A DNA stretch of 64,000 nt from Macrostomum lignano (lineage: Eukaryota): positions 62,001 through 126,000 of the forward strand of contig NIVC01000913.1 of the NCBI GenBank assembly GCA_002269645.1, read 5' to 3'. The notes under the pieces are model-generated. The model did not search any database, had not been told where the DNA came from, and worked only from the letters and a program-made list of their open reading frames with translations. Within the stretch, counting starts at the first letter, position 1; each line of letters begins with the position of its first letter. Of this stretch, positions 136-62,164 are shown piece after piece. The position numbers and the translations under genes are program-made.

Positions 136-918
136 ATGCAGATCTCATCAAGCAAGCGCCAGAAGCGGCAGCAACAGGAGCAGGAGCAGCGGGTGTCAGA
201 CGAGCAAGCCGCCGAACAGGAGCCAATGGAACTCTCGCTCAACAGTCTGGAAGCTGAGTGCGCCATCTGCTGTTGCGGCATCGACACTGAAGCCGGCGTG
301 CCAAACGGTTGCTGTCACAGCTTCTGTTTCGACTGCCTGAAGGAATGGGTGGTCAACAATGCCAGCTGCCCGATGGACCGGCGGCCGGTGAACTTTATCT
401 ACAAGCGCCAGCCGGGCTCGCAGGCCTTCACTGGGCGGCACCGGGTGTTCCTGCGGAACAGTCGCGACGCCTGCCAGGGCGGCTACTGCGGCCCGTTGGA
501 GTCGCCGCCTGGGGAGCCGCACTTCTCTGAGCCTGGCGGCGGCGGCGGCGGCGGCGGCTGGTTCAGTTCGGCCAGACTCGAACCCAGCGCCCCTCCGGCC
601 TCCAGCTTTGACAATAACGACAGAAGCAACAATGCCAACGCGAATGCCTCGGCGGCTAGAAGCGACGGAGATGTATCAGCTCTGTTCGCGTTCGTAGCAG
701 CCGTACTGTTGGCCATTGTCATCTTCGCGTTCTTCCGCAGATACGGAGCTTCGCCGAATCCGGTGCCGACTCCTGCTCCGCCACCGGCTGCCGAATCCGG
801 TAGCTCAGTAGCCAATCTGATTCAGTTTGTTGTCCTTGTGGTGGTGCTGTACCTCACCGCCCAGCTCTGCCTGACGAGCAGTCAGACTAATACTAGAGCA
901 GTGCCGGGTCGGGCTTGA
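136..918 (+). CDS. RING-finger protein (PHRF1/SCAF11-type RING) with two C-terminal hydrophobic segments; putative membrane E3 ligase
   Basis: ORF carries CAIC...GVPNGCCHSFCFDCLKEW...SCPMDR, a C3HC4-like RING with Asp as the last ligand, as in the PHRF1/SCAF11 CPVDR. Two hydrophobic runs follow (SALFAFVAAVLLAIVIFAFF; LIQFVVLVVVLYLTAQLCL). GC-rich and apparently intronless. Confidence 0.8.
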   Translation: MQISSSKRQKRQQQEQEQRVSDEQAAEQEPMELSLNSLEAECAICCCGIDTEAGVPNGCCHSFCFDCLKEWVVNNASCPMDRRPVNFIYKRQPGSQAFTGRHRVFLRNSRDACQGGYCGPLESPPGEPHFSEPGGGGGGGGWFSSARLEPSAPPASSFDNNDRSNNANANASAARSDGDVSALFAFVAAVLLAIVIFAFFRRYGASPNPVPTPAPPPAAESGSSVANLIQFVVLVVVLYLTAQLCLTSSQTNTRAVPGRA

Positions 919-1142: not shown

Positions 1143-2030
1143 AATCCCAGAATTCTAACCCACAGTCTGAGAACCCCGAATCCTTAAATCCCAACCCTGA
1201 TCCTAAATATCCCAGAATGCTGATCCCAAATCCTTGAATCCTGATCCCGAATCCTTGAATCCCAACCCCGATCCCAAATCCCAGAATCCTGATCCCAAAT
1301 CCTTGAATCTTGATCCCAAATCCTTGAATCCTGATCCCAAATTCCAGAATCCTGATCCCAAATCCTTGAATCTTGATCCCAAATCCTTGAATCCTGATTC
1401 CAAATTCCAGAATCCTGATTGACTGATTCCCAATCCCAGAATCCTGATCCCAAACCCCAGAATCCTGATCCCAAATCCTTGAATCTTGAACCCAAATCCT
1501 TAAATCTTGAACCCAAATCCTTAAATCTTGATCCCAAATCCTTGAATCCTGATTCCAAATTCCAGAATCCTGATCCCAAATCCCAGAATCCTGATCCCAA
1601 ATCCTTGAATCTTGATCCCAAATCCTTGAATCTTGATCCCAAATCCTTGAATCTTGATCCCAAATCCTTGAATCCTGATTCCAAATTCCAGAATCCTGAT
1701 TGACTGATTCCCAATCCCAGAATCCTGATCCCAAACCCCAGAATCCTGATCCCAAATCCTTGAATCTTGAACCCAAATCCTTGAATCTTGAACCCAAATC
1801 CTTGAATCTTGAACCCAAATCCTTGAATCTTGAACCCAAATCCTTAAATCTTGAACCCAAATTCTTGAATCTTGAACCCAAATCCTTGAATCCTGATCCC
1901 AAATCCTTGAATCTTGATCCCAAATCCTTGAATCCTGATCCCAAATCCCAGAATCCTGATCCCAAATCCCAGAATCCTGATCCCTTATCCCAGAATCATG
2001 ATCCCTTATCCCAGAATCCTGATCCAGCAT
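1143..2030. repeat. 21-bp minisatellite (GAATCCTGATCCCAAATCCYW) with a higher-order duplication of about 281 bp
   Basis: Unit read directly; the variant TTGACTGATTCCCAATCCCAG recurs at about 1419 and 1700. Confidence 0.95.
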
Positions 2031-2644
2031 GCATGCCAAAATCTAGACCCCGAACTCGTGAAATTACTTTCTCAGACACGTCAGTCTATAATGCATATCC
2101 CCAGTCCGGAGCAGAGTCTGTTTATTCCGACCAAGAATGCTTATTTTGATAGCCTAGATAATTATTTCGTGAGTTTTTAGAATTTTACTATTCCATACCA
2201 TTTGCCTTGTGTTAGCAAGTGGTTTCTCCATTAACAGTATAATTATAGAATGTTAATTGCCTTTCAATTTCCCTTTTTAACAATAGTGGTACCGTATGCG
2301 GCTTAAAAAACGTAACAACATGTGTGCCTATTTTTGCGTTAAAAATTTATGAAACGATTTTAATGCTAGTGTATTTTCGCTATCTTTATTACTCTTAAAA
2401 GTAAAAAATGTAGTTATTGCTTCAAAATACTACTTACGAGTACACAATGATTGTAAACACAGAAGTTGTTTGGAAGGAAAATATATTTGACAAGAAAACT
2501 GCCTATTTTTTAAGCATTCAAAGAAAACGTCGCCAAAACGCTATTAAGATGGATTTTACGTAGTTTTTGGGAATTGTACTTTCGATTTTTGTGGGAGTTA
2601 CAATTCAACTATTCGATGAGAATTAGGCTGGCGGCGCAAGTCAA

Positions 2645-3395
2645 AATCGAGGTACATTGAGCGAGGCAGAGTGGCTTGAATTAGTAGGGCAGGAGGCAAA
2701 ATTGATGTACATTGGGCGAGGTGGGGTGACTTGAACTGGCGGGGCAGAGGAGCCAAAATTGATGTACATTGGGCGAGGTTGGGTGGCTTGAACTGGCGGG
2801 ACAGAGAGCCAAGATTGATGTACATTGGGCGAGGTGGGGTGGCTTGAACTGGAGGGGCAGAGAGCGCCACAATCGATGTACATTGGGCGAGGTGGGGTGG
2901 CTTGAACTGGCGGGGCAGAGGAGCCAAAATTGATGTACATTGGGCGAGGTGGGGTGGCTTGAACTGGCGGGGCAGAAAGAGCCAAAATTGATGTACATTG
3001 GGCGAGGTGGGTGGCTTGAACTGGAGGGGCAGAGAGCGCCACAATCGATGTACATTGGGCGAGGTGGGGTGGCTTGAACTGGCGGGGCAGAAAGAGCCAA
3101 AATTGATGTACATTGGGCGAGGTGGGGTGGCTTGAACTGGCGGGGCAGAAAGAGCCAAAATTGATGTACATTGGGCGAGGTCGGTGGCTTGAACTGGCGG
3201 GGCAGAGAGCGCCACAATCGATGTACATTGGGCGAGGTGGGGTGGCTTGAACTGGCGGGACAGAGAGCCAAAATTGATGTACATTGAGCCAGGTGGGTGG
3301 CTTGAACTGGAGGGGCAGAGAGCGCCACAATCGATGTACATTGGGCGAGGTGGGGTGGCTTGGACTGGCGGGGCAGAGAGCGTCACAATCGATGA
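2645..3395. repeat. Minisatellite of about 60 bp, about 12 copies
   Basis: TGATGTACATTGGGCGAGGTGGGGTGGCTTGAACTGGCGGGGCAGAGAG(CGCCACAATC/CCAAAAT) repeated. Confidence 0.95.
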
Positions 3396-3659: not shown

Positions 3660-3908
3660 GAACCAATGGCAAACCGATTTTGGCTTCTTGCGCAGCTGCC
3701 CACCCACCCCCTGCCAGTAACGAGCCTATAAAATGGAACGCTTCATCTCTGGCAGCTGGAAGTGCCCGCCTCCACAATCTAACTATATTCCCTGATCGCT
3801 GCAGTGAAGCAAGGTACTAAGCAATAAAGGTAAGAGTAGTAAGCAATGTACTATTGCAGTATGTAAGCAGCACGAGTGAGATGATGCCGATTCCAAACCC
3901 CGTTGTAG
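3660..3908 (+). promoter_or_regulatory. Putative core promoter and 5'UTR intron of peptide precursor 1
   Basis: CCAAT near 3663, TATAAAA at 3727-3733, GTAAGA donor at 3830, TGTAG acceptor at 3908, ATG at 3937. Confidence 0.5.
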
Positions 3909-3936
3909 ACTCATCAACTTCGACCAAACACTGGTA

Positions 3937-4230
3937 ATGTCCCCGATCTCGCTGGCCATCCTGCTGATTGCGGCTGTGTCCTCGGCCTCGGCGATGCCAC
4001 CGCATAACCGCCGGCGGGAGAACTTGTCGGACGAGCTCATGAAGTTTGCGACGGCGGCGGCCGCTGCTGCTGCTGGCCCGCCGGACGCCTTCGACGAGCT
4101 GGTGGAGCCGCTGGCCGCCGCTGAAGGCGAACCTCGCCATCGTGGCAGCCGGTTGTCACCGTTCTTAAGCAAGAGGCACAGTCTTCAGTCGATTCTGTAC
4201 AAGCTGGGCCACTTCAAAAGTGGCAAATGA
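3937..4230 (+). CDS. Secreted neuropeptide-precursor-like protein 1; predicted peptide HSLQSILYKLGHFKS-amide
   Basis: 97 aa: signal peptide (MSPISLAILLIAAVSSASA), RRR site, acidic/Ala spacer, KR site and C-terminal GK amidation signal. The core is shared with 6357-6638. Confidence 0.85.
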   Translation: MSPISLAILLIAAVSSASAMPPHNRRRENLSDELMKFATAAAAAAAGPPDAFDELVEPLAAAEGEPRHRGSRLSPFLSKRHSLQSILYKLGHFKSGK

Positions 4231-4449
4231 TGGCCCAATGGCCTTCAGCAGCTGACTAGACAAGCACAGACTCCATGCGATTGAAACATTCGAAAATATA
4301 TTCTTTTTTTAAATCGAAAGTTTGCTGCGCTACATCTTTGTGACTTTCGATTTTTAAATTACACTCGTCTTTTATAATGTAATTGTTTGATTTACGAGAG
4401 TAATATCAAGAAATGGGTTACTTTATGATAACTACTGAGTGTGGAGGGC

Positions 4450-5380
4450 TCACTGAAGCTTCAGAAAGTAGCTGTGGGGTCACTAAAGCATCAGAAAGAC
4501 AGTCGGGTCACTGAAGCACCATGAAATCCCAATGTGGTCACTGACGCATCAGGAAGTCGCAGTGGGGGTCACTGAAGCATCAGAAAGCCGCACTGGGGGT
4601 CACTGAAGCATCAGAAAGCCGCACTGGGGGTCACTGACGCATCAGGAAGTCGCAGTGGGGGTCACTGAAGCATCAGAAAGTCGCAGTGGGGGTCACTGAA
4701 GCATCAGGAAGTCGCAGTGGGGCTCACTGAAGCATCAGAAAGTCGCAGTGGGGGTCACTGAAGCATCAGGAAGTCGCAGTGGGGCTCACTGAAGCATCAG
4801 GAAGTCGCAGTGGGGGTCACTGAAGCATCAGAAAGTTGCAGTGGGGGTCACTGAGCACCAGGAAATCAAAATAGGGTCACTGAAGCATCAGAAAGTCGCA
4901 GTGGGGGTCACTGAAGCATCAGGAAGTCGCAGTGGGGCTCACTGAAGCATCAGAAAGTCGCAGTGGGGGTCACTGAAGCATCAGGAAGTCGCAGTGGGGC
5001 TCACTGAAGCATCAGGAAGTCGCAGTGGGGGTCACTGAAGCATCAGAAAGTTGCAGTGGGGGTCACTGAGCACCAGGAAATCAAAATAGGGTCACTGAAG
5101 CATCAGAAAGCCGCACTGGGGGTCACTGAAGCATCAGAAAGCCGCACTGGGGGTCACTGAAGCATCAGAAAGCCGCACTGGGGGTCACTGAAGCATCAGA
5201 AAGCCGCACTGGGGGTCACTGAAGCATCAGAAAGCCGCACTGGGGGTCACTGAAGCATCAGAAAGCCGCACTGGGGGTCACTGAAGCATCAGAAAGCCGC
5301 ACTGGGGGTCACTGAAGCATCAGAAAGCCGCACTGGGGGTCACTGAAGCATCAGAAAGCCGCAGTAAGAGGTTACTGAAG
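4450..5380. repeat. 31-bp minisatellite (CACTGAAGCATCAGAAAGCCGCACTGGGGGT)
   Basis: About 30 copies between the two peptide genes; a variant block GAGCACCAGGAAATCAAAATAGG recurs at about 4853 and 5068. Confidence 0.95.
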
Positions 5381-6149
5381 CGTTGGAGGCGGTAGCGACA
5401 AAATTATTATCCGAGGTAAAATCCATAAATTTTGCTGCCGACGCTGAATTTAAAATTATTTTTAGACGCGAAACAATTCCCTCGCGCTGATATGCGATCC
5501 CGTGGATCCGCAGAAATTGAGACAGCTACGCCCCAGAACATGACTCTGCCCCGTGTCTTAATGAAGATTGTTGCCAACCCCCCTGCCAGAAAACAATTAG
5601 CAGTCCGATTTAATCAGTGTTGGATTTCAGGCGTCTCAGAATTTTAATAATTCGAGTAATTGGAGTTTACGAGTATCTCACCTGCTGGGAGACACAACAG
5701 GTGAGCGCGTGGGAGGACAGCTCCATTCTTATTCGTCTACTGTTCCTTCGGCCTCCGCGAAATCAATTTATTTCATGCGAAGCTTTTCTCATCTTTCCTG
5801 ATTTTTTTGTTTTAACATTTAACTGTTCCCCTACTGCTGTACTGCATCGAGGAGGCGATGGCATGGTGATCTGGGTGTGTAGTATCGGCGGCACTGCTGT
5901 GGAGACGTTCTGTGGGGAAACGGTTGCTCAAATACTAACTTATTTTATAAATCATTATGCATTCTCATGTGATGGAAATTCGGAGAGTGATTCCAGTCGA
6001 CATTGGGAATGAAGAATGAAAAGTGAGCCATTAAATTTCTCAGGGCAGTCAAGCTCTATCAGATTGCTTTTTCTGTGAGTTCTAAAATTAGCTGCATAGT
6101 TGATGCAGCCAATCATGAGATCTGAGGAGCTGTTCGACATCTCAACTAT

Positions 6150-6326
6150 CAATATTTAAAGCAAACTCACCCAGCTTAAATATTCTCTTAAGGCCCTCAA
6201 AAAATCTCCACACTAAAAACTGGGAGACTTCGAAATCCGGTAAGTTGGCTTCGAGATTCCCCCCCCCCCAGAGTTTTTCATACTTTTGAAGCAGGCTCAA
6301 ACTCGGATGCACTGATTCCGTTCCAG
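6150..6326 (+). promoter_or_regulatory. Putative TATA-like box and 5'UTR intron of peptide precursor 2
   Basis: TATTTAAA near 6152, GTAAGT donor at 6240, TTCCAG acceptor at 6326, ATG at 6357, AATAAA at 6724. Confidence 0.5.
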
Positions 6327-6356
6327 AGCTTCATCAAGAACCAAGCAACAAGCACA

Positions 6357-6638
6357 ATGGCTGCCTCTCTCTCGTTGAAGCCGACAGCTCTGCTGCTGCT
6401 GGTACTGCTTTCGGTGGCATCGGGAGCCAACTCTGCTGACAACCCTCTGGAGGGGCTGGTGAATTTCTGCCGTCAAATCTGCGAACAGGAGCGGCTGTCA
6501 GCTGACAGCCTTTGGCAGCCTCAGCCTCAGCCGAGGCCAGTGAGCCTCAGCCGGAGAACGCCGAGTCTTCAAGCCATCTTCTACAAGCTGGGCCATCCGC
6601 CGGAATCCAGCAAGGACAAGAAGCAGCAATTCTTCTGA
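6357..6638 (+). CDS. Secreted neuropeptide-precursor-like protein 2; predicted peptide TPSLQAIFYKLGHPPESSKD
   Basis: 93 aa: signal peptide (MAASLSLKPTALLLLVLLSVASG), CxxxC (FCRQIC), RR and KK sites flanking the peptide. LS-RR-TPSLQAIFYKLGH parallels LS-KR-HSLQSILYKLGH in precursor 1. Confidence 0.85.
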   Translation: MAASLSLKPTALLLLVLLSVASGANSADNPLEGLVNFCRQICEQERLSADSLWQPQPQPRPVSLSRRTPSLQAIFYKLGHPPESSKDKKQQFF

Positions 6639-7051
6639 TTTCTGCCTCAGAACTTCGACTTTTGATTTAGATTGTTTTGGCAGTCGAATCGTAGAACTTG
6701 GATTTTTTGAAGAACAAAATTTAAATAAAAGCCCCATCGGCGGGAGAAGGTGGCTGACTGTTACGAATCGCATGGTTCCAACGACTTATATTCATTTTTA
6801 TTGACAAAAGTTCCAATTACTCTACTGATCAGTAGTCAGTTAATGCCGCTATTCTTCAAGTAATAATTTTGAATACTTGGAATAATAGATGAATGCCAGC
6901 ATATTTCAGTAAAAGCTGCTACACCGAATAATTTGCAACGCGAAGAAGATTCAATCTGTTCTGCATCGCTCAGCCTCACAAGCAAATATTCTAATAGAGT
7001 ATTGCCTACTTTAGGACGCTTGTGTCATAACTGAGAATTATGACAATCATA

Positions 7052-8380
7052 CCGCTTCCGCTCCCGCTTCCGCTCCCGCTTCCGCTCCCGCTTCCGCTCC
7101 CGCTTCCGCTCCCGCTTCCGCTCCCGCTTCCGCTCCCGCTTCCGCTCCCGCTTCCGCTCCCGCTTCCGCTCCCGCTTCCGCTCCCGCTTCCGCTCCCGCT
7201 TCCGCTCCCGCTTCCGCTCCCGCTTCCGCTCCCGCTTCCGCTCCCGCTTCCGCTCCCGCTTCCGCTCCCGCTTCCGCTCCCGCTTCCGCTCCCGCTTCCG
7301 CTCCCGCTTCCGCTCCCGCTTCCGCTCCCGCTTCCGCTCCCGCTTCCGCTCCCGCTTCCGCTCCCGCTTCCGCTCCCGCTTCCGCTCCCGCTTCCGCTCC
7401 CGCTTCCGCTCCCGCTTCCGCTCCCGCTTCCGCTCCCGCTTCCGCTCCCGCTTCCGCTCCCGCTTCCGCTCCCGCTTCCGCTCCCGCTTCCGCTCCCGCT
7501 TCCGCTCCCGCTTCCGCTCCCGCTTCCGCTCCCGCTTCCGCTCCCGCTTCCGCTCCCGCTTCCGCTCTCGCTTCCGCTCTCGCTTCCGCTCTCGCTTCCG
7601 CTCTCGCTTCCGCTCTCGCTTCCGCTCTCGCTTCCGCTCTCGCTTCCGCTCTCGCTTCCGCTCTCGCTTCCGCTCTCGCTTCCGCTCTCGCTTCCGCTCT
7701 CGCTTCCGCTCTCGCTTCCGCTCTCGCTTCCGCTCTCGCTTCCGCTCTCGCTTCCGCTCTCGCTTCCGCTCTCGCTTCCGCTCTCGCTTCCGCTCTCGCT
7801 TCCGCTCTCGCTTCCGCTCTCGCTTCCGCTCTCGCTTCCGCTCTCGCTTCCGCTCTCGCTTCCGCTCTCGCTTCCGCTCTCGCTTCCGCTCTCGCTTCCG
7901 CTCTCGCTTCCGCTCTCGCTTCCGCTCTCGCTTCCGCTCTCGCTTCCGCTCTCGCTTGCTCTCATCTCCCTGTCTCTCATCTCCCTGTCTCTCATCTCCC
8001 TGTCTCTCATCTCCCTGTCTCTCATCTCCCTGTCTCTCATCTCCCTGTCTCTCATCTCCCTGTCTCTCATCTCCCTGTCTCTCATCTCCCTGTCTCTCAT
8101 CTCCCTGTCTCTCATCTCCCTGTCTCTCATCTCCCTGTCTCTCATCTCCCTGTCTCTCATCTCCCTGTCTCTCATCTCCCTGTCTCTCATCTCCCTGTCT
8201 CTCATCTCCCTGTCTCTCATCTCCCTGTCTCTCATCTCCCTGTCTCTCATCTCCCTGTCTCTCATCTCCCTGTCTCTCATCTCCCTGTCTCTCATCTCCC
8301 TGTCTCTCATCTCCCTGTCTCTCATCTCCCTGTCTCTCATCTCCCTGTCTCTCATCTCCCTGTCTCTCATCTCCCTGTCT
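7052..8380. repeat. Compound perfect array: (CCGCTTCCGCTC)n, then (TCGCTTCCGCTC)n, then (CTCATCTCCCTGTCT)n
   Basis: Switches at about 7565 and 7957; explains the 454-506 aa ORFs. Confidence 0.98.
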
Positions 8381-8797
8381 CTCTCTATCTCTTTCTCTCT
8401 CTTCTTGTGCAGCTCTCGAAATAGAATACTGTGTTCCCCTATCCCAGTTGCAAGACACGTGCATATTCAAGCCCTTTTGTGGATAGTTCACAACATCAGA
8501 AAATGGTAAACTATCACTGTTAAACCTAACCGCAGCTCCCTCCAACGAAGTGGCGTCTCCGCTTCACATTTTGAAGCTGTTAATAAACTGGATAAAAGAG
8601 AGAAGCCCAACTATATTGACACCATTTAGCTACCGCTTCCAGGCAGATGCTGATTTCGCGTATGCAAAACGCTGCTTAGGGATTTTGGTACATTAAATAA
8701 CCGGCTGTTAACGACTGGCACCCAAATTTAGCTGGGGAAAGAATGAGCTGAGCCATCTGAGCACTTCAATGTTCTGTTACTGTTGACATTGTGCGAA

Positions 8798-9525
<728 letters not shown>

Positions 9526-9979
9526 GAAAAAGTGCAGCACGGGGCGCGCACTACAGTAGCTTCGTTCAGGCGTCCCAACTTACGTTTTTCACTTGGTTCG
9601 GTTTCAGATTCGGGCAGAGACACATTTGCGAGCTTCGGTGGAAGCGGCCTCTCAACCCCTCTCCAGCTCCCTTCAGCTGTCTCTCCTGCGTTCAGCTCGC
9701 GTCCGTCACATATTTTAATTTGTACGATTTGTTACACAAAAGTTTGGACTATCCTACTTATTAGTAGTCAGTGCGTAAATGCCATTATTCACCAAAATCA
9801 TAATATTAAGATCCTGAATGTATTCATTTCAGTAATTCAATTAGCAATCCATGCACCGACATTGAGACTCAGAAGAGATGCTGAATCAGTTAGAAAACTT
9901 GGAAGGTTCTATCCACATATAGTTCTTCATCACTTAGCCTAGCGGAGTTTTCCAGCACTCACAGATACCAACCGATTCA

Positions 9980-10163: not shown

Positions 10164-10946
<783 letters not shown>

Positions 10947-30901: not shown

Positions 30902-34023
<3,122 letters not shown>

Positions 34024-49482: not shown

Positions 49483-59524
<10,042 letters not shown>

Positions 59525-61625: not shown

Positions 61626-62164
61626 CTCTCTCCTTACCTACCCCCCTACCTGCTCAGGTTCATACTTAACAGAAAATATCTGGAACGAGTGTATATAGCA
61701 TTGTTATGAACTATTTACAGCTCTACTGAAGAAAAAAACAAATTAGAATACTGGCATTGGACTCCGGTCTGATTTTCCTCTCTGACTCTCTGACTCTGAC
61801 TCAAGTTATTGATCATAATTGCTGCTGTTTGGTACAATAAAAGCCTTGCTATATGAACCATCAGTTTATAGGTACCGGTATGTTAGATTTCGAAACAAGT
61901 TCGACCAAAGTTCGAATAAAAAAACCAGCTCATACGGTAGTTATGGACCACGCGCTATTCGAGTTTTATAACCCAAATCATGGCCCATATGCTCCCCCAT
62001 ATGCCCCTCCATAAACTGGTGAGGAAGGCTTGCTTCTTGGTTTTTGTGCGCCTAAACTGTGTTGGATGAACCTGAGTGAGCATCTCTGACTGCAACTTTG
62101 TTTCCGGCTAGGATTAGCTGAGTTGAATAAAATCTAGAATATGGGATAGCAATTATTAACAGAA

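What the first reader, a model, noticed from the sequence alone, without database searches (positions are those of the whole stretch)
3937..6638. Tandem pair of secreted peptide precursors defining a SLQxIxYKLGH peptide family
Seen: two same-strand genes 2.4 kb apart, each with a signal peptide, one coding exon and a probable short 5'UTR intron. They differ everywhere except LS-[KR]R followed by (H/TP)SLQ(S/A)I(L/F)YKLGH. Precursor 1 ends in GK (amidation); precursor 2 is not amidated and has a CxxxC pro-region. Inference: conservation confined to the segment after the dibasic site marks the bioactive peptide. I cannot place it in a known protostome neuropeptide family, so this may be an undescribed signalling system with two ligands.
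Basis: partly seen in the sequence, partly recalled or inferred. Interest (0 to 1): 0.8.

Follow-up and report, generated by a model that had tools for sequence, protein, structure and literature searches.

The report
Two orphan flatworm secreted-peptide precursor genes
Two neighbouring genes of the flatworm Macrostomum lignano encode small secreted precursors that share only one short peptide just after a cleavage site, so they look like hormone or neuropeptide precursors of a family I could not match to any named one, though no relative outside this species was found.

Summary
The window is Macrostomum lignano contig NIVC01000913.1. ORF 3937-4230 (97 aa) and ORF 6357-6638 (93 aa) are both transcript-based GenBank gene models (Mlig016515, Mlig028219). 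Each has a hydrophobic N-terminal leader, coding-type GC3 and a short intron about 30 nt before the ATG.

The two proteins share only LS[KR]R + SLQ[SA]I[LF]YKLGH (BLASTP E=4e-5). The core cross-score is 48, against a next-best 27 in the six-frame window. Five conserved residues use different codons. Copies of gene 1 give pN/pS 0.14. Both results indicate selection on the protein.

The best reading is an old tandem duplicate pair of prohormone-type genes. Each would release one related peptide: HSLQSILYKLGHFKS-amide, and TPSLQAIFYKLGHPP… without amidation.

No homologue turned up in Pfam, PDB, three protein searches, a profile scan of 1.84 billion representatives, metagenome pattern scans or paper searches. 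These searches are weak for a 14-residue core and probably hold few flatworm sequences.

An eye-catching resemblance to galanin/spexin is at chance level and lacks Trp2. Neuronal expression, processing and a receptor are untested.

Verdict: a real, probably lineage-restricted candidate peptide-signal family, a new member of a known kind, of moderate interest.

The parts
3727..3733 (+). TATAAAA box of gene 1 (Mlig016515). The transcription start is inferred to lie about 30 nt downstream.
   Evidence: Regex scan and sequence. The promoter function is inferred.
3830..3908 (+). Putative 5'UTR intron of gene 1. The acceptor TTGTAG|A places the start of exon 2 at 3909. The donor AAAG|GTAAGA at 3829/3830 is inferred, and CAAG|GTACTA at 3813/3814 is an alternative.
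   Evidence: The acceptor is used in UniParc model P0009 (...VVVL|LINFDQTLAMSP...). The donor was read from the sequence.
3937..4230 (+). CDS of precursor 1 (97 aa). The GenBank gene is Mlig016515; near-identical copies are PAA47114/PAA76199, UniProt A0A267FT61.
   Evidence: GC3 is 0.76 against flank GC of 0.35-0.45. pN/pS is 0.14 against the other two genomic copies.
3937..3993 (+). Predicted signal peptide of P1 (residues 1-19, MSPISLAILLIAAVSSASA|M).
   Evidence: Hydropathy and -3/-1 rule heuristic. SignalP was not run.
4171..4176 (+). Lys79-Arg80 dibasic cleavage site of P1, within the conserved L-S-K-R context.
4177..4221 (+). Predicted mature peptide 1, HSLQSILYKLGHFKS. The conserved core SLQSILYKLGH is at 4180-4212.
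   Evidence: The calculated amidated monoisotopic mass is 1755.978. Processing is inferred.
4222..4227 (+). C-terminal Gly-Lys, a canonical amidation signal (Gly donor plus a basic residue) directly before the stop codon.
   Evidence: Sequence. The function is inferred from established knowledge of carboxypeptidase E and peptidylglycine alpha-amidating monooxygenase (PAM) processing.
4446..5381 (.). A 31-bp satellite of 30.5 copies fills most of the spacer between the two genes. It is not part of either gene.
   Evidence: Spacer length differs among the three genomic copies.
6153..6159 (+). TATA-like TATTTAA of gene 2, starting 42 nt upstream of the annotated transcript 5' end at 6195.
   Evidence: The transcript start comes from the GenBank model.
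6195..6239 (+). Non-coding exon 1 of gene 2 (Mlig028219). GenBank reads it as a 5'-partial ORF because no stop codon precedes the ATG.
   Evidence: The 118-aa model P0001 equals 6195-6239 joined to 6327-6638.
6240..6326 (+). 5'UTR intron of gene 2 (GTAAGT...TTCCAG, 87 nt). It ends 30 nt before the ATG, the same layout as in gene 1.
6357..6638 (+). CDS of precursor 2 (93 aa from the first ATG). GenBank entries are PAA74920/PAA76200.
   Evidence: GC3 is 0.69.
6357..6425 (+). Predicted signal peptide of P2 (about residues 1-23; several small-residue cleavage candidates between residues 19 and 26).
   Evidence: heuristic.
6552..6557 (+). Arg66-Arg67 dibasic cleavage site of P2, within the conserved L-S-R-R context.
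6558..6635 (+). Predicted C-terminal peptide 2, TPSLQAIFYKLGHPPESSKDKKQQFF. The conserved core is at 6564-6596. An internal KK (residues 88-89) could shorten it to a 20-mer plus QQFF. There is no amidation signal.
6724..6729 (+). AATAAA polyadenylation signal of gene 2, 86 nt after the stop codon. Gene 1 has only a variant AATATA at 4295.

Best explanation
These are two old tandem-duplicate genes of Macrostomum lignano that encode prohormone-type precursors. Each protein is proposed to follow these steps:
1. It enters the secretory pathway through an N-terminal signal peptide.
2. A prohormone convertase cuts it after the conserved L-S-[KR]-R site.
3. That cut releases one C-terminal peptide built around SLQ[SA]I[LF]YKLGH.

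Precursor 1 would be trimmed of its C-terminal Lys and amidated on the Gly, giving HSLQSILYKLGHFKS-NH2. Precursor 2 would give a non-amidated peptide, TPSLQAIFYKLGHPPESSKD(KKQQFF). The two peptides would then act as related extracellular signals (neuropeptide or hormone) on the same or on paralogous receptors.

Shown here: the gene models, transcript-based annotation, coding constraint, leader-like N-termini, the cleavage and amidation motifs, and conservation restricted to the peptide.

Inferred: cleavage, amidation, the cell type that secretes the peptides, and the receptor.
For: - Organism and gene status. Both are GenBank genes of assembly GCA_002269645.1. That annotation derives from RNA-seq transcript assemblies plus TransDecoder (PMC5730564).
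- Coding signature. GC3 is 0.76 and 0.69, like neighbouring exons (0.69-0.81), against flank GC of 0.35-0.45.
- Purifying selection on gene 1. There are 7 substitutions between genomic copies, 5 synonymous and 2 replacement. pN/pS is 0.14, with a binomial P of 0.015.
- Purifying selection on the core. Of the 14 residues conserved between the paralogs, 5 use different synonymous codons. Outside the core there is no DNA similarity.
- Specificity of the core. The cross-score is 48 against a background maximum of 27 in the six-frame window. BLASTP gives E=4e-5.
- Leader peptides.
- A shared gene layout. Both have a TATA element, a short non-coding exon, a 79-87-nt intron ending 28-30 nt before the ATG, and a single coding exon.
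- No sign of a globular fold. AlphaFold2 gives mean pLDDT of 58 and 61, with only isolated helices. One helix lies over the core, at residues 76-93 in P1 and 71-77 in P2.
- The pro-regions are net acidic, as in many prohormones.
Against: - No orthologue or further paralogue was found anywhere, so cross-species conservation of the peptide is unproven.
- No expression pattern, peptidomic detection or receptor is available. Supplement look-ups in five M. lignano papers found neither gene id.
- Only one of the two precursors has an amidation signal.
- The signal peptides were judged by heuristic only.
- One of the three genomic copies of gene 2 (L004) has a 1-bp deletion inside the core. If real, this shows that one copy is dispensable.
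- No Logan (public sequencing-run) assembly in the collection carries the exact proteins. This is compatible with low expression or with absence of those data from the collection.
Confidence: 0.55

Rival explanations
1. These are small secreted proteins or peptides of a non-neural secretory tissue, such as prostate or seminal fluid, cement, adhesive or other gland cells. They would be lineage-specific effectors, processed or not, rather than internal signals. M. lignano has many fast-evolving, species-restricted secreted reproductive and gland proteins.
For: - The genes appear restricted to M. lignano in every search.
- They are short secreted ORFs without domains.
- The literature retrieved describes rapid evolution of reproduction-related genes and seminal fluid screens in Macrostomum (PMC7336406 and PMC5977470, listed).
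- P2 lacks amidation and has a CxxxC helix.
Against: - The conservation pattern fits a processed ligand. Only the segment after a conserved LS[KR]R site is kept, while the rest has diverged beyond recognition.
- P1 has a C-terminal Gly-Lys.
- Neither gene id appears in the held supplements of the three-species reproductive RNA-seq paper. This is a weak test.
Confidence: 0.2
2. These are host-defence (antimicrobial) or toxin-like peptides. The architecture of signal peptide, acidic pro-piece, KR, then a short cationic C-terminally amidated peptide is that of amphibian-type antimicrobial peptide (AMP) precursors.
For: - The pro-regions are acidic: P1 has 9 D/E against 4 K/R, and P2 has 5 against 3.
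- The P1 peptide has net charge +2 plus two His and an amide.
- A helix is predicted over the core.
Against: - The helical hydrophobic moment is not unusual. Shuffles reach it in 5-23% of trials.
- The 20-mer from P2 has net charge 0.
- AMP families typically conserve the signal and pro-piece and vary the mature peptide (established knowledge). Here the pattern is the reverse.
Confidence: 0.08
3. These are divergent galanin/spexin-type ligands of a protostome. In P2 the peptide follows the dibasic site in the same register as galanin and spexin (Tyr9, Gly12, with L/Q/[SA] at positions 4-6).
For: - In-register comparison with galanin (sequence confirmed in PDB 7wq3_L) and with spexin NWTPQAMLYLKGAQ (PMC6593056) gives 4-5 identities in 14.
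- Protostomes have galanin-receptor orthologues, the allatostatin-A receptors (PMC4489612).
Against: - The similarity is at chance level. Between 0.3% and 0.7% of random 14-mers from the window score as high, and the shuffle P is 0.005-0.015. The comparison was also chosen by eye from many peptide families. Galanin against spexin scores 23, a level reached by only 9e-5 of the same background.
- Of the five positions shared by galanin and spexin (2, 3, 9, 10, 12), only Tyr9 and Gly12 are present. Trp2, a receptor-binding determinant, is absent (PMC6593056).
- There is no Pfam Galanin or Spexin hit even at E<=10, and no PDB galanin hit.
Confidence: 0.04
4. The shared motif is a coincidence between two unrelated or non-functional small ORFs.
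For: If every ORF pair in a 64-kb window were compared blindly, a pairwise E of 4e-5 would not by itself be decisive. No homologues exist to confirm the family.
Against: - The cross-score of 48 compares with a background maximum of 27.
- The motif sits at the same place in both proteins, right after LS[KR]R near the C-terminus.
- Both proteins have leader peptides, are adjacent on the same strand and share the same exon-intron layout.
- Both are transcript-based gene models.
- Gene 1 is under purifying selection.
Confidence: 0.03

Closest known systems
Flatworm single-peptide prohormones (the npp/spp-type genes catalogued in planarians, Collins et al. 2010, PMC2953531, and in other Platyhelminthes)
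   Same: A short (~100 aa) precursor with a signal peptide, a divergent spacer and one bioactive-looking peptide. That peptide is delimited by dibasic sites and optionally ends in Gly plus a basic residue for amidation. These families are often lineage-restricted.
   Different: The SLQxIxYKLGH motif and its 4-6-residue fragments do not occur in the main text or in the held supplements of the planarian catalogue, or in any open paper searched. No sequence relative was found in any database search.
Galanin / spexin (vertebrate ligands of galanin receptors)
   Same: The peptide starts directly after a dibasic site. It has Tyr at position 9 and Gly at 12 (in the P2 register), Leu4, Gln/Asn5 and Ser/Ala6, followed by Gly-(Pro)-His as in galanin YLLGPH. 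Like galanin, the conserved part is N-terminal and the C-terminal tail is variable.
   Different: It lacks Trp2 and Leu10, and Thr3 is replaced by Ser. The similarity score is no better than 0.3-0.7% of random 14-mers. There is no Pfam or PDB hit. The pro-region is much longer than in preprogalanin or prospexin (from memory).
Allatostatin-A / buccalin (protostome ligands of galanin-receptor orthologues)
   Same: A Tyr-x-[Phe/Leu]-Gly string (Y-K-L-G) resembles the Y/F-x-F-G-L core. A cleavage-delimited peptide is also shared.
   Different: The family is defined by a C-terminal FGL/I-amide and usually by many peptide copies per precursor (PMC4489612 and PMC9263205, listed). Here YKLGH is internal. 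P1 ends in FKS-amide and P2 is not amidated. Each precursor carries one copy.

Membership tests
Prohormone / neuropeptide-precursor class (generic) | N-terminal signal peptide | tested here: met
   Hydrophobic cores with mean KD of 2.95 and 3.22, followed by small-residue -3/-1 sites. This is a heuristic only; SignalP was not available.
Prohormone / neuropeptide-precursor class (generic) | Candidate peptide delimited by mono- or dibasic convertase sites | tested here: met
   KR (residues 79-80) in P1 and RR (residues 66-67) in P2, both in a conserved L-S-[KR]-R context.
Prohormone / neuropeptide-precursor class (generic) | Conservation concentrated in the peptide, with a divergent spacer | tested here: met
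   BLASTP aligns only 17 residues. The only DNA similarity is 14 nt. Synonymous differences occur within conserved residues. This comparison is between paralogs only; no orthologues are available.
Prohormone / neuropeptide-precursor class (generic) | C-terminal Gly(+basic) amidation signal | tested here: inconclusive
   Present in P1 (…KSGK-stop) and absent in P2 (…QQFF-stop). Amidation is not obligatory for the class.
Prohormone / neuropeptide-precursor class (generic) | Expression in neurons or endocrine cells; mature peptide detected; cognate receptor | not testable with these tools
   No expression data were found for Mlig016515 or Mlig028219 in five papers' supplements. An M. lignano single-nucleus atlas exists (PMC11398382) but could not be queried.
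Galanin / spexin | Invariant positions 2, 3, 9, 10 and 12 (Trp2, Thr3, Tyr9, Leu10, Gly12). Trp2, Thr3 and Tyr9 determine receptor binding (PMC6593056). | tested here: not met
   Only Tyr9 and Gly12 are present. Position 2 is Pro or His, position 3 is Ser and position 10 is Lys.
Galanin / spexin | Match to the family profile (Pfam Galanin or Spexin), or significant similarity to the peptides | tested here: not met
   No Pfam family matches at E<=10. No galanin chain is among the PDB hits. The in-register score is reached by 0.3-0.7% of random 14-mers.
Allatostatin-A / buccalin | C-terminal Y/F-x-F-G-L/I-amide, usually in multiple copies per precursor | tested here: not met
   YKLGH is internal. 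The C-termini are FKS-Gly-Lys and QQFF, and there is one copy per precursor.
Cationic amphipathic antimicrobial-peptide precursors | Strongly amphipathic, net-cationic mature peptide; conserved signal and pro-piece with a hypervariable mature part | tested here: not met
   The hydrophobic moment is not above shuffles (P 0.05-0.23). The P2 20-mer has net charge 0. The conservation pattern is the reverse of the AMP pattern.
Catalogued planarian prohormones (Collins et al. 2010) | Shared peptide motif with a listed prohormone | tested here: not met
   YKLG, KLGH, YRLG, SLQSI, SLQAI and LGHF are absent from the held supplements, and YKLG, KLGH, LGH and SLQ from the main text. This string test is weak. 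McVeigh 2009 was not held, and I did not try to retrieve Koziol 2016.

The most novel reading that the evidence does not exclude
The pair could be the first sequence-recognisable galanin/spexin-like ligands in a protostome. In that case the peptides would act on the flatworm orthologues of galanin/allatostatin-A receptors. The N-terminal 'x-x-[ST]-L-[NQ]-[SA]-x-x-Y-x-L-G' signature would then predate the protostome-deuterostome split. My evidence does not exclude this, but it puts the resemblance at chance level, and the key Trp2 is missing. A more modest novel reading is a previously undescribed, macrostomid-restricted two-ligand neuropeptide system. I rate that separately at about 0.4 probability and about 0.4 interest.
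Probability: 0.04. Interest if true: 0.8.

Novelty: new member of a known kind. Interest (0 to 1): 0.35.

Why it matters
If confirmed, the pair adds a candidate two-ligand peptide signalling family to Macrostomum lignano, which a retrieved paper (PMC8717057) describes as the only flatworm with stable transgenesis. Both genes have compact promoters with a TATA element within about 200 bp of the ATG. These could serve as cell-type-specific drivers.

The peptides give concrete targets for peptidomics, with calculated masses of 1755.978 and 2214.132 Da, and for GPCR deorphanisation.

The case also shows a practical pitfall. Precursor 1 was invisible to the clustered protein databases because a chimeric gene model had pulled it into a cluster represented by the neighbouring RING protein.

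The finding does not by itself change any general view. Lineage-restricted prohormones are common in flatworms, and nothing yet links this family to a conserved bilaterian system.

Tried and rejected
1. Pfam scans of both precursors and of their C-terminal parts, up to E=10, gave nothing relevant.
2. PDB sequence searches gave only noise (protein A, ferritin, glutamate dehydrogenase).
3. The search for homologous proteins gave the following:
   - With P1 it found nothing.
   - With P2 it found only M. lignano's own copies.
   - With a core alignment it reported no candidate sharing three 5-mers. That search did not recover P0001 either, so it is a weak negative.
4. A profile of the C-terminal 38 columns was run against 1.84 billion representatives. 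It returned only the gene's own copies plus P0003. P0003 is a 628-aa TPR_12 repeat protein whose four repeats add up to the score, and I rejected it as a chance match. Only hits with E<=0.001 were listed, so a relative that conserves just the ~14-residue core would have been missed.
5. Metagenome scans with SLQ[AS]I[FL]YKL gave 47 pattern hits, none confirmed by tblastn. The full 11-residue pattern gave 0 hits. Metagenomes are a poor proxy for flatworm transcriptomes.
6. Paper searches for YKLGH, and for YKLG together with 'neuropeptide', found nothing relevant. A search for Mlig028219 found no paper. Supplement searches for both gene ids in five M. lignano papers found nothing.
7. The galanin/spexin resemblance was tested and found to be at chance level.
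8. The AMP idea was tested by hydrophobic moment and charge, and was not supported.
9. A search for a third family member in the window found none.
10. Rfam and tRNA scans of the window were empty.
11. McVeigh et al. 2009 (PMC2749192) is not held.
Full report
**Identity of the window.** An exact-protein look-up places ORF1 on NIVC01000913.1 of assembly GCA_002269645.1. [quoted passage not shown] Window position 1 corresponds to record position 62,001. The window is eukaryotic, rich in satellites, and has GC-rich exons in AT-richer flanks.

**Check of the observation.** ORF1 (3937..4230, 97 aa) and ORF2 (6357..6638, 93 aa) are present as described, both on the + strand. BLASTP aligns only LSKRH-SLQSILYKLGH with LSRRTPSLQAIFYKLGH: 12/17 identical, E=4e-5. 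P1 ends in Gly-Lys-stop. P2 ends in KDKKQQFF-stop and contains C38xxxC42. Both N-termini have a strongly hydrophobic 10-residue core followed by small-residue cleavage candidates. This was a heuristic check, because SignalP was not available.

The match is well beyond background:
- The two 11-residue cores score 48 against each other. The best unrelated stop-free 11-mer in the six-frame translation of all 64 kb scores 27.
- There is no third member in the window.
- At DNA level the genes share nothing but a 14-nt string inside the core.

**Are they genes?** Both are GenBank gene models. Gene 1 is Mlig016515: its copies in the other loci are PAA47114/PAA76199 (UniProt A0A267FT61), which differ from the window copy by two residues. 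Gene 2 is Mlig028219, PAA74920/PAA76200. The GenBank annotation of this assembly is not ab initio. It is a genome-guided RNA-seq transcript assembly, cut with trans-splicing and poly(A) evidence and given ORFs by TransDecoder (PMC5730564). So a transcript underlies each model.

The gene 2 model is '5'-partial', 118 aa long. It consists of 6195-6239 spliced to 6327-6638. The transcript start at 6195 lies 42 nt downstream of the start of a TATTTAA element, and an AATAAA follows the stop codon by 86 nt.

For gene 1, a TATAAAA sits at 3727. The acceptor at 3908|3909, 28 nt before the ATG, is used in an independent UniParc model, P0009. The donor is inferred. Both genes therefore have the same layout.

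Both ORFs have the GC3 of local exons (0.76 and 0.69, against 0.69-0.81). Their flanks have GC of 0.35-0.45.

**Selection.** The assembly holds three copies of the whole RING-gene, gene 1, gene 2 locus: the window copy, NIVC01000838 and NIVC01004569. This fits the neopolyploid genome of this species (PMC10733133, listed).
- The gene 1 CDS differs between the window copy and the other two by 7 substitutions. Five are synonymous and two are replacements (S5L and F52L), neither in the peptide. This gives pS 0.067, pN 0.009 and pN/pS 0.14, with a binomial P of 0.015.
- Gene 2 is identical in all three copies except for a 1-bp deletion inside the YKLGH codons of one copy. That deletion yields the frameshifted model P0002. 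It sits in about 740 nt that are otherwise identical apart from a poly-C length difference. It may be an assembly indel or a very recent lesion; I cannot tell which.
- Between the two paralogs, 5 of the 14 conserved residues use different synonymous codons (L, R, Q, I, H). Everything else has diverged beyond alignment. The duplication is therefore old, and the peptide sequence itself has been maintained.

**What it is and how it most likely works.** The anatomy is that of a prohormone:
- a leader peptide;
- a net-acidic spacer, with 9 D/E against 4 K/R in P1 and 5 against 3 in P2;
- a conserved L-S-[KR]-R convertase site;
- then the only conserved segment.

AlphaFold2 predicts no confident fold. 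Mean pLDDT is 58 and 61, with isolated helices, one of them over the core. This fits a processed peptide better than a small globular protein.

From standard knowledge of convertase, carboxypeptidase and PAM processing, the predicted products are as follows. P1 would give HSLQSILYKLGHFKS-NH2 (M 1755.978). P2 would give TPSLQAIFYKLGHPPESSKD (M 2214.132) or the full 26-mer.

I consider a pair of related secreted signalling peptides the most likely function (0.55). Whether the producing cells are neurons is open. The cleavage, the amidation and the receptor are all inferred.

**Rival explanations.**
- A gland or reproductive secreted protein remains possible (0.2), because the genes look species-restricted and Macrostomum has many such proteins. 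The ligand-type conservation pattern and the Gly-Lys end argue against it.
- An antimicrobial peptide is unlikely (0.08). The hydrophobic moment is ordinary, the P2 20-mer is uncharged, and the conservation pattern is the opposite of typical AMP families.
- Pure coincidence is very unlikely (0.03).

**Comparison with known families.** No named family could be matched:
- Pfam gave nothing up to E=10, and PDB gave only noise.
- Three word-indexed searches of 5.8 billion proteins gave nothing or only the gene's own copies.
- An HMM of the C-terminal 38 columns, run against 1.84 billion representatives, returned only the gene's own copies and a TPR_12 repeat protein that I reject.
- Two metagenome pattern scans were negative.
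- Full-text searches were negative.
- The motif's fragments are absent from the planarian prohormone catalogue, in both the main text and the held supplements.

These negatives have limits:
- The collections probably contain few flatworm transcriptomes.
- The profile search listed only hits with E<=0.001, so a relative keeping only the core would be missed.
- The last word-indexed search failed to recover even the query's own protein.
- McVeigh 2009 could not be read, and I did not try to retrieve Koziol 2016.

**The galanin/spexin lead.** By eye the peptides align in register with galanin (GWTLNSAGYLLGPH, confirmed in PDB 7wq3_L) and spexin (NWTPQAMLYLKGAQ, PMC6593056). The shared features are Tyr9, Gly12 and L/Q/[SA] at positions 4-6. 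I tested this in three ways:
- The in-register BLOSUM62 scores are 10-12. Between 0.3% and 0.7% of random 14-mers from the window reach that, and so do 0.5-1.5% of shuffles. Galanin against spexin scores 23, at a background frequency of 9e-5.
- Of the five positions that define the galanin-spexin relationship, only two are present. Trp2, a binding determinant, is missing.
- The Pfam Galanin and Spexin models do not match.

Given that the comparison was picked from many peptide families, this is chance-level. I keep it only as a 4% long shot. The allatostatin-A/buccalin definition, a C-terminal FGL-amide, is not met either.

**Why precursor 1 seemed absent from the databases.** A 1,007-aa UniParc model (P0009) joins four parts through canonical GT-AG junctions: an antisense-looking ORF, the RING gene, gene 1 and gene 2. 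The junctions are at window 849|3909 and 4219|6292. Clustering through this chimera placed the 97-aa protein in a cluster whose representative is the RING protein. It is therefore hidden from representative-based searches.

**Verdict.** 'Secreted peptide precursors with the bioactive part after the dibasic site' is well supported by anatomy and selection. 'Neuropeptide' and 'signalling system' are plausible but untested. No relative outside this species was found, and the searches have limited power. This is a new member of a known kind. Interest is 0.35.

Noticed in passing
window 849|3909 and 4219|6292; protein P0009: A 1,007-aa UniParc/MetaClust model (UPI0007A2EB98) fuses an antisense-looking ORF, the upstream RING gene, precursor 1 and precursor 2 through canonical GT-AG junctions. 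It is either a gene-prediction chimera or a read-through transcriptional unit. It caused precursor 1 to be clustered under the RING protein P0006, hiding it from clustered-database searches.
   Followed up: partly
L004 (NIVC01004569.1), equivalent to window 6581: One of the three genomic copies of gene 2 has a 1-bp deletion (ATCTTCTACAAG becomes ATCTTTACAAG) inside the conserved core, giving the frameshifted 136-aa model P0002. The surrounding ~740 nt are otherwise identical among the copies apart from a poly-C length difference. It could be an assembly indel or a recent inactivation.
   Followed up: partly
window 5472-6069 compared with L003 and L004: The variant pattern among the three locus copies is mosaic. 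L004 agrees with L003 at 5472-5849, but agrees with the window copy at 5913-6069. From 6070 to 6808 all three are identical apart from a poly-C length difference (6259-6260) and the 1-bp deletion at 6581. This suggests recombination or gene conversion between the polyploid copies.
   Followed up: no
window 4446-5381: A 31-bp satellite (GGGGTCACTGAAGCATCAGAAAGTCGCAGTG, 30.5 copies, 89% matches) fills the spacer between the two genes. Spacer length differs by about 250-320 bp among the three genomic copies.
   Followed up: partly
window 1215-2025, 2642-3394, 7052-8383, 8798-9526, 10196-10901: There is a dense series of mini- and microsatellite arrays around the gene pair, with periods of 21/42, 58/115, 12, 15, 4 (GTCT) and 9 bp. 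They produce long spurious ORFs on both strands.
   Followed up: no
window 136-918 (+): This is the last exon of a RING-H2 finger protein (Pfam zf-RING_2, E=1e-7) with a hydrophobic C-terminal region. The gene is Mlig030161/Mlig026013/Mlig021768 (415-422 aa). It is the conserved upstream neighbour of the pair in all three locus copies.
   Followed up: partly
window 33051-33755 (+); 50275-51009 (-); 52298-52702 (-): Other exons lie in the window. One is an Arfaptin-like (BAR-type) domain exon (E=7e-11) preceded by a TDRQ repeat. One minus-strand ORF has a PDZ-domain match (50275-51009, E=2e-7). A second ORF (52298-52702) looks PDZ-like by eye but had no Pfam hit. Neither is obviously related to the peptide genes.
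   Followed up: no
protein P0003 (not in the window): A 628-aa TPR_12 repeat protein carries the repeated string SLASVYYKMGEFNKSKE, which mimics SLQSILYKLGHFKSGK. It reached E=1.3e-4 in the profile search only by summing four repeats. It is a reminder that short-motif profiles pick up repeat proteins.
   Followed up: yes
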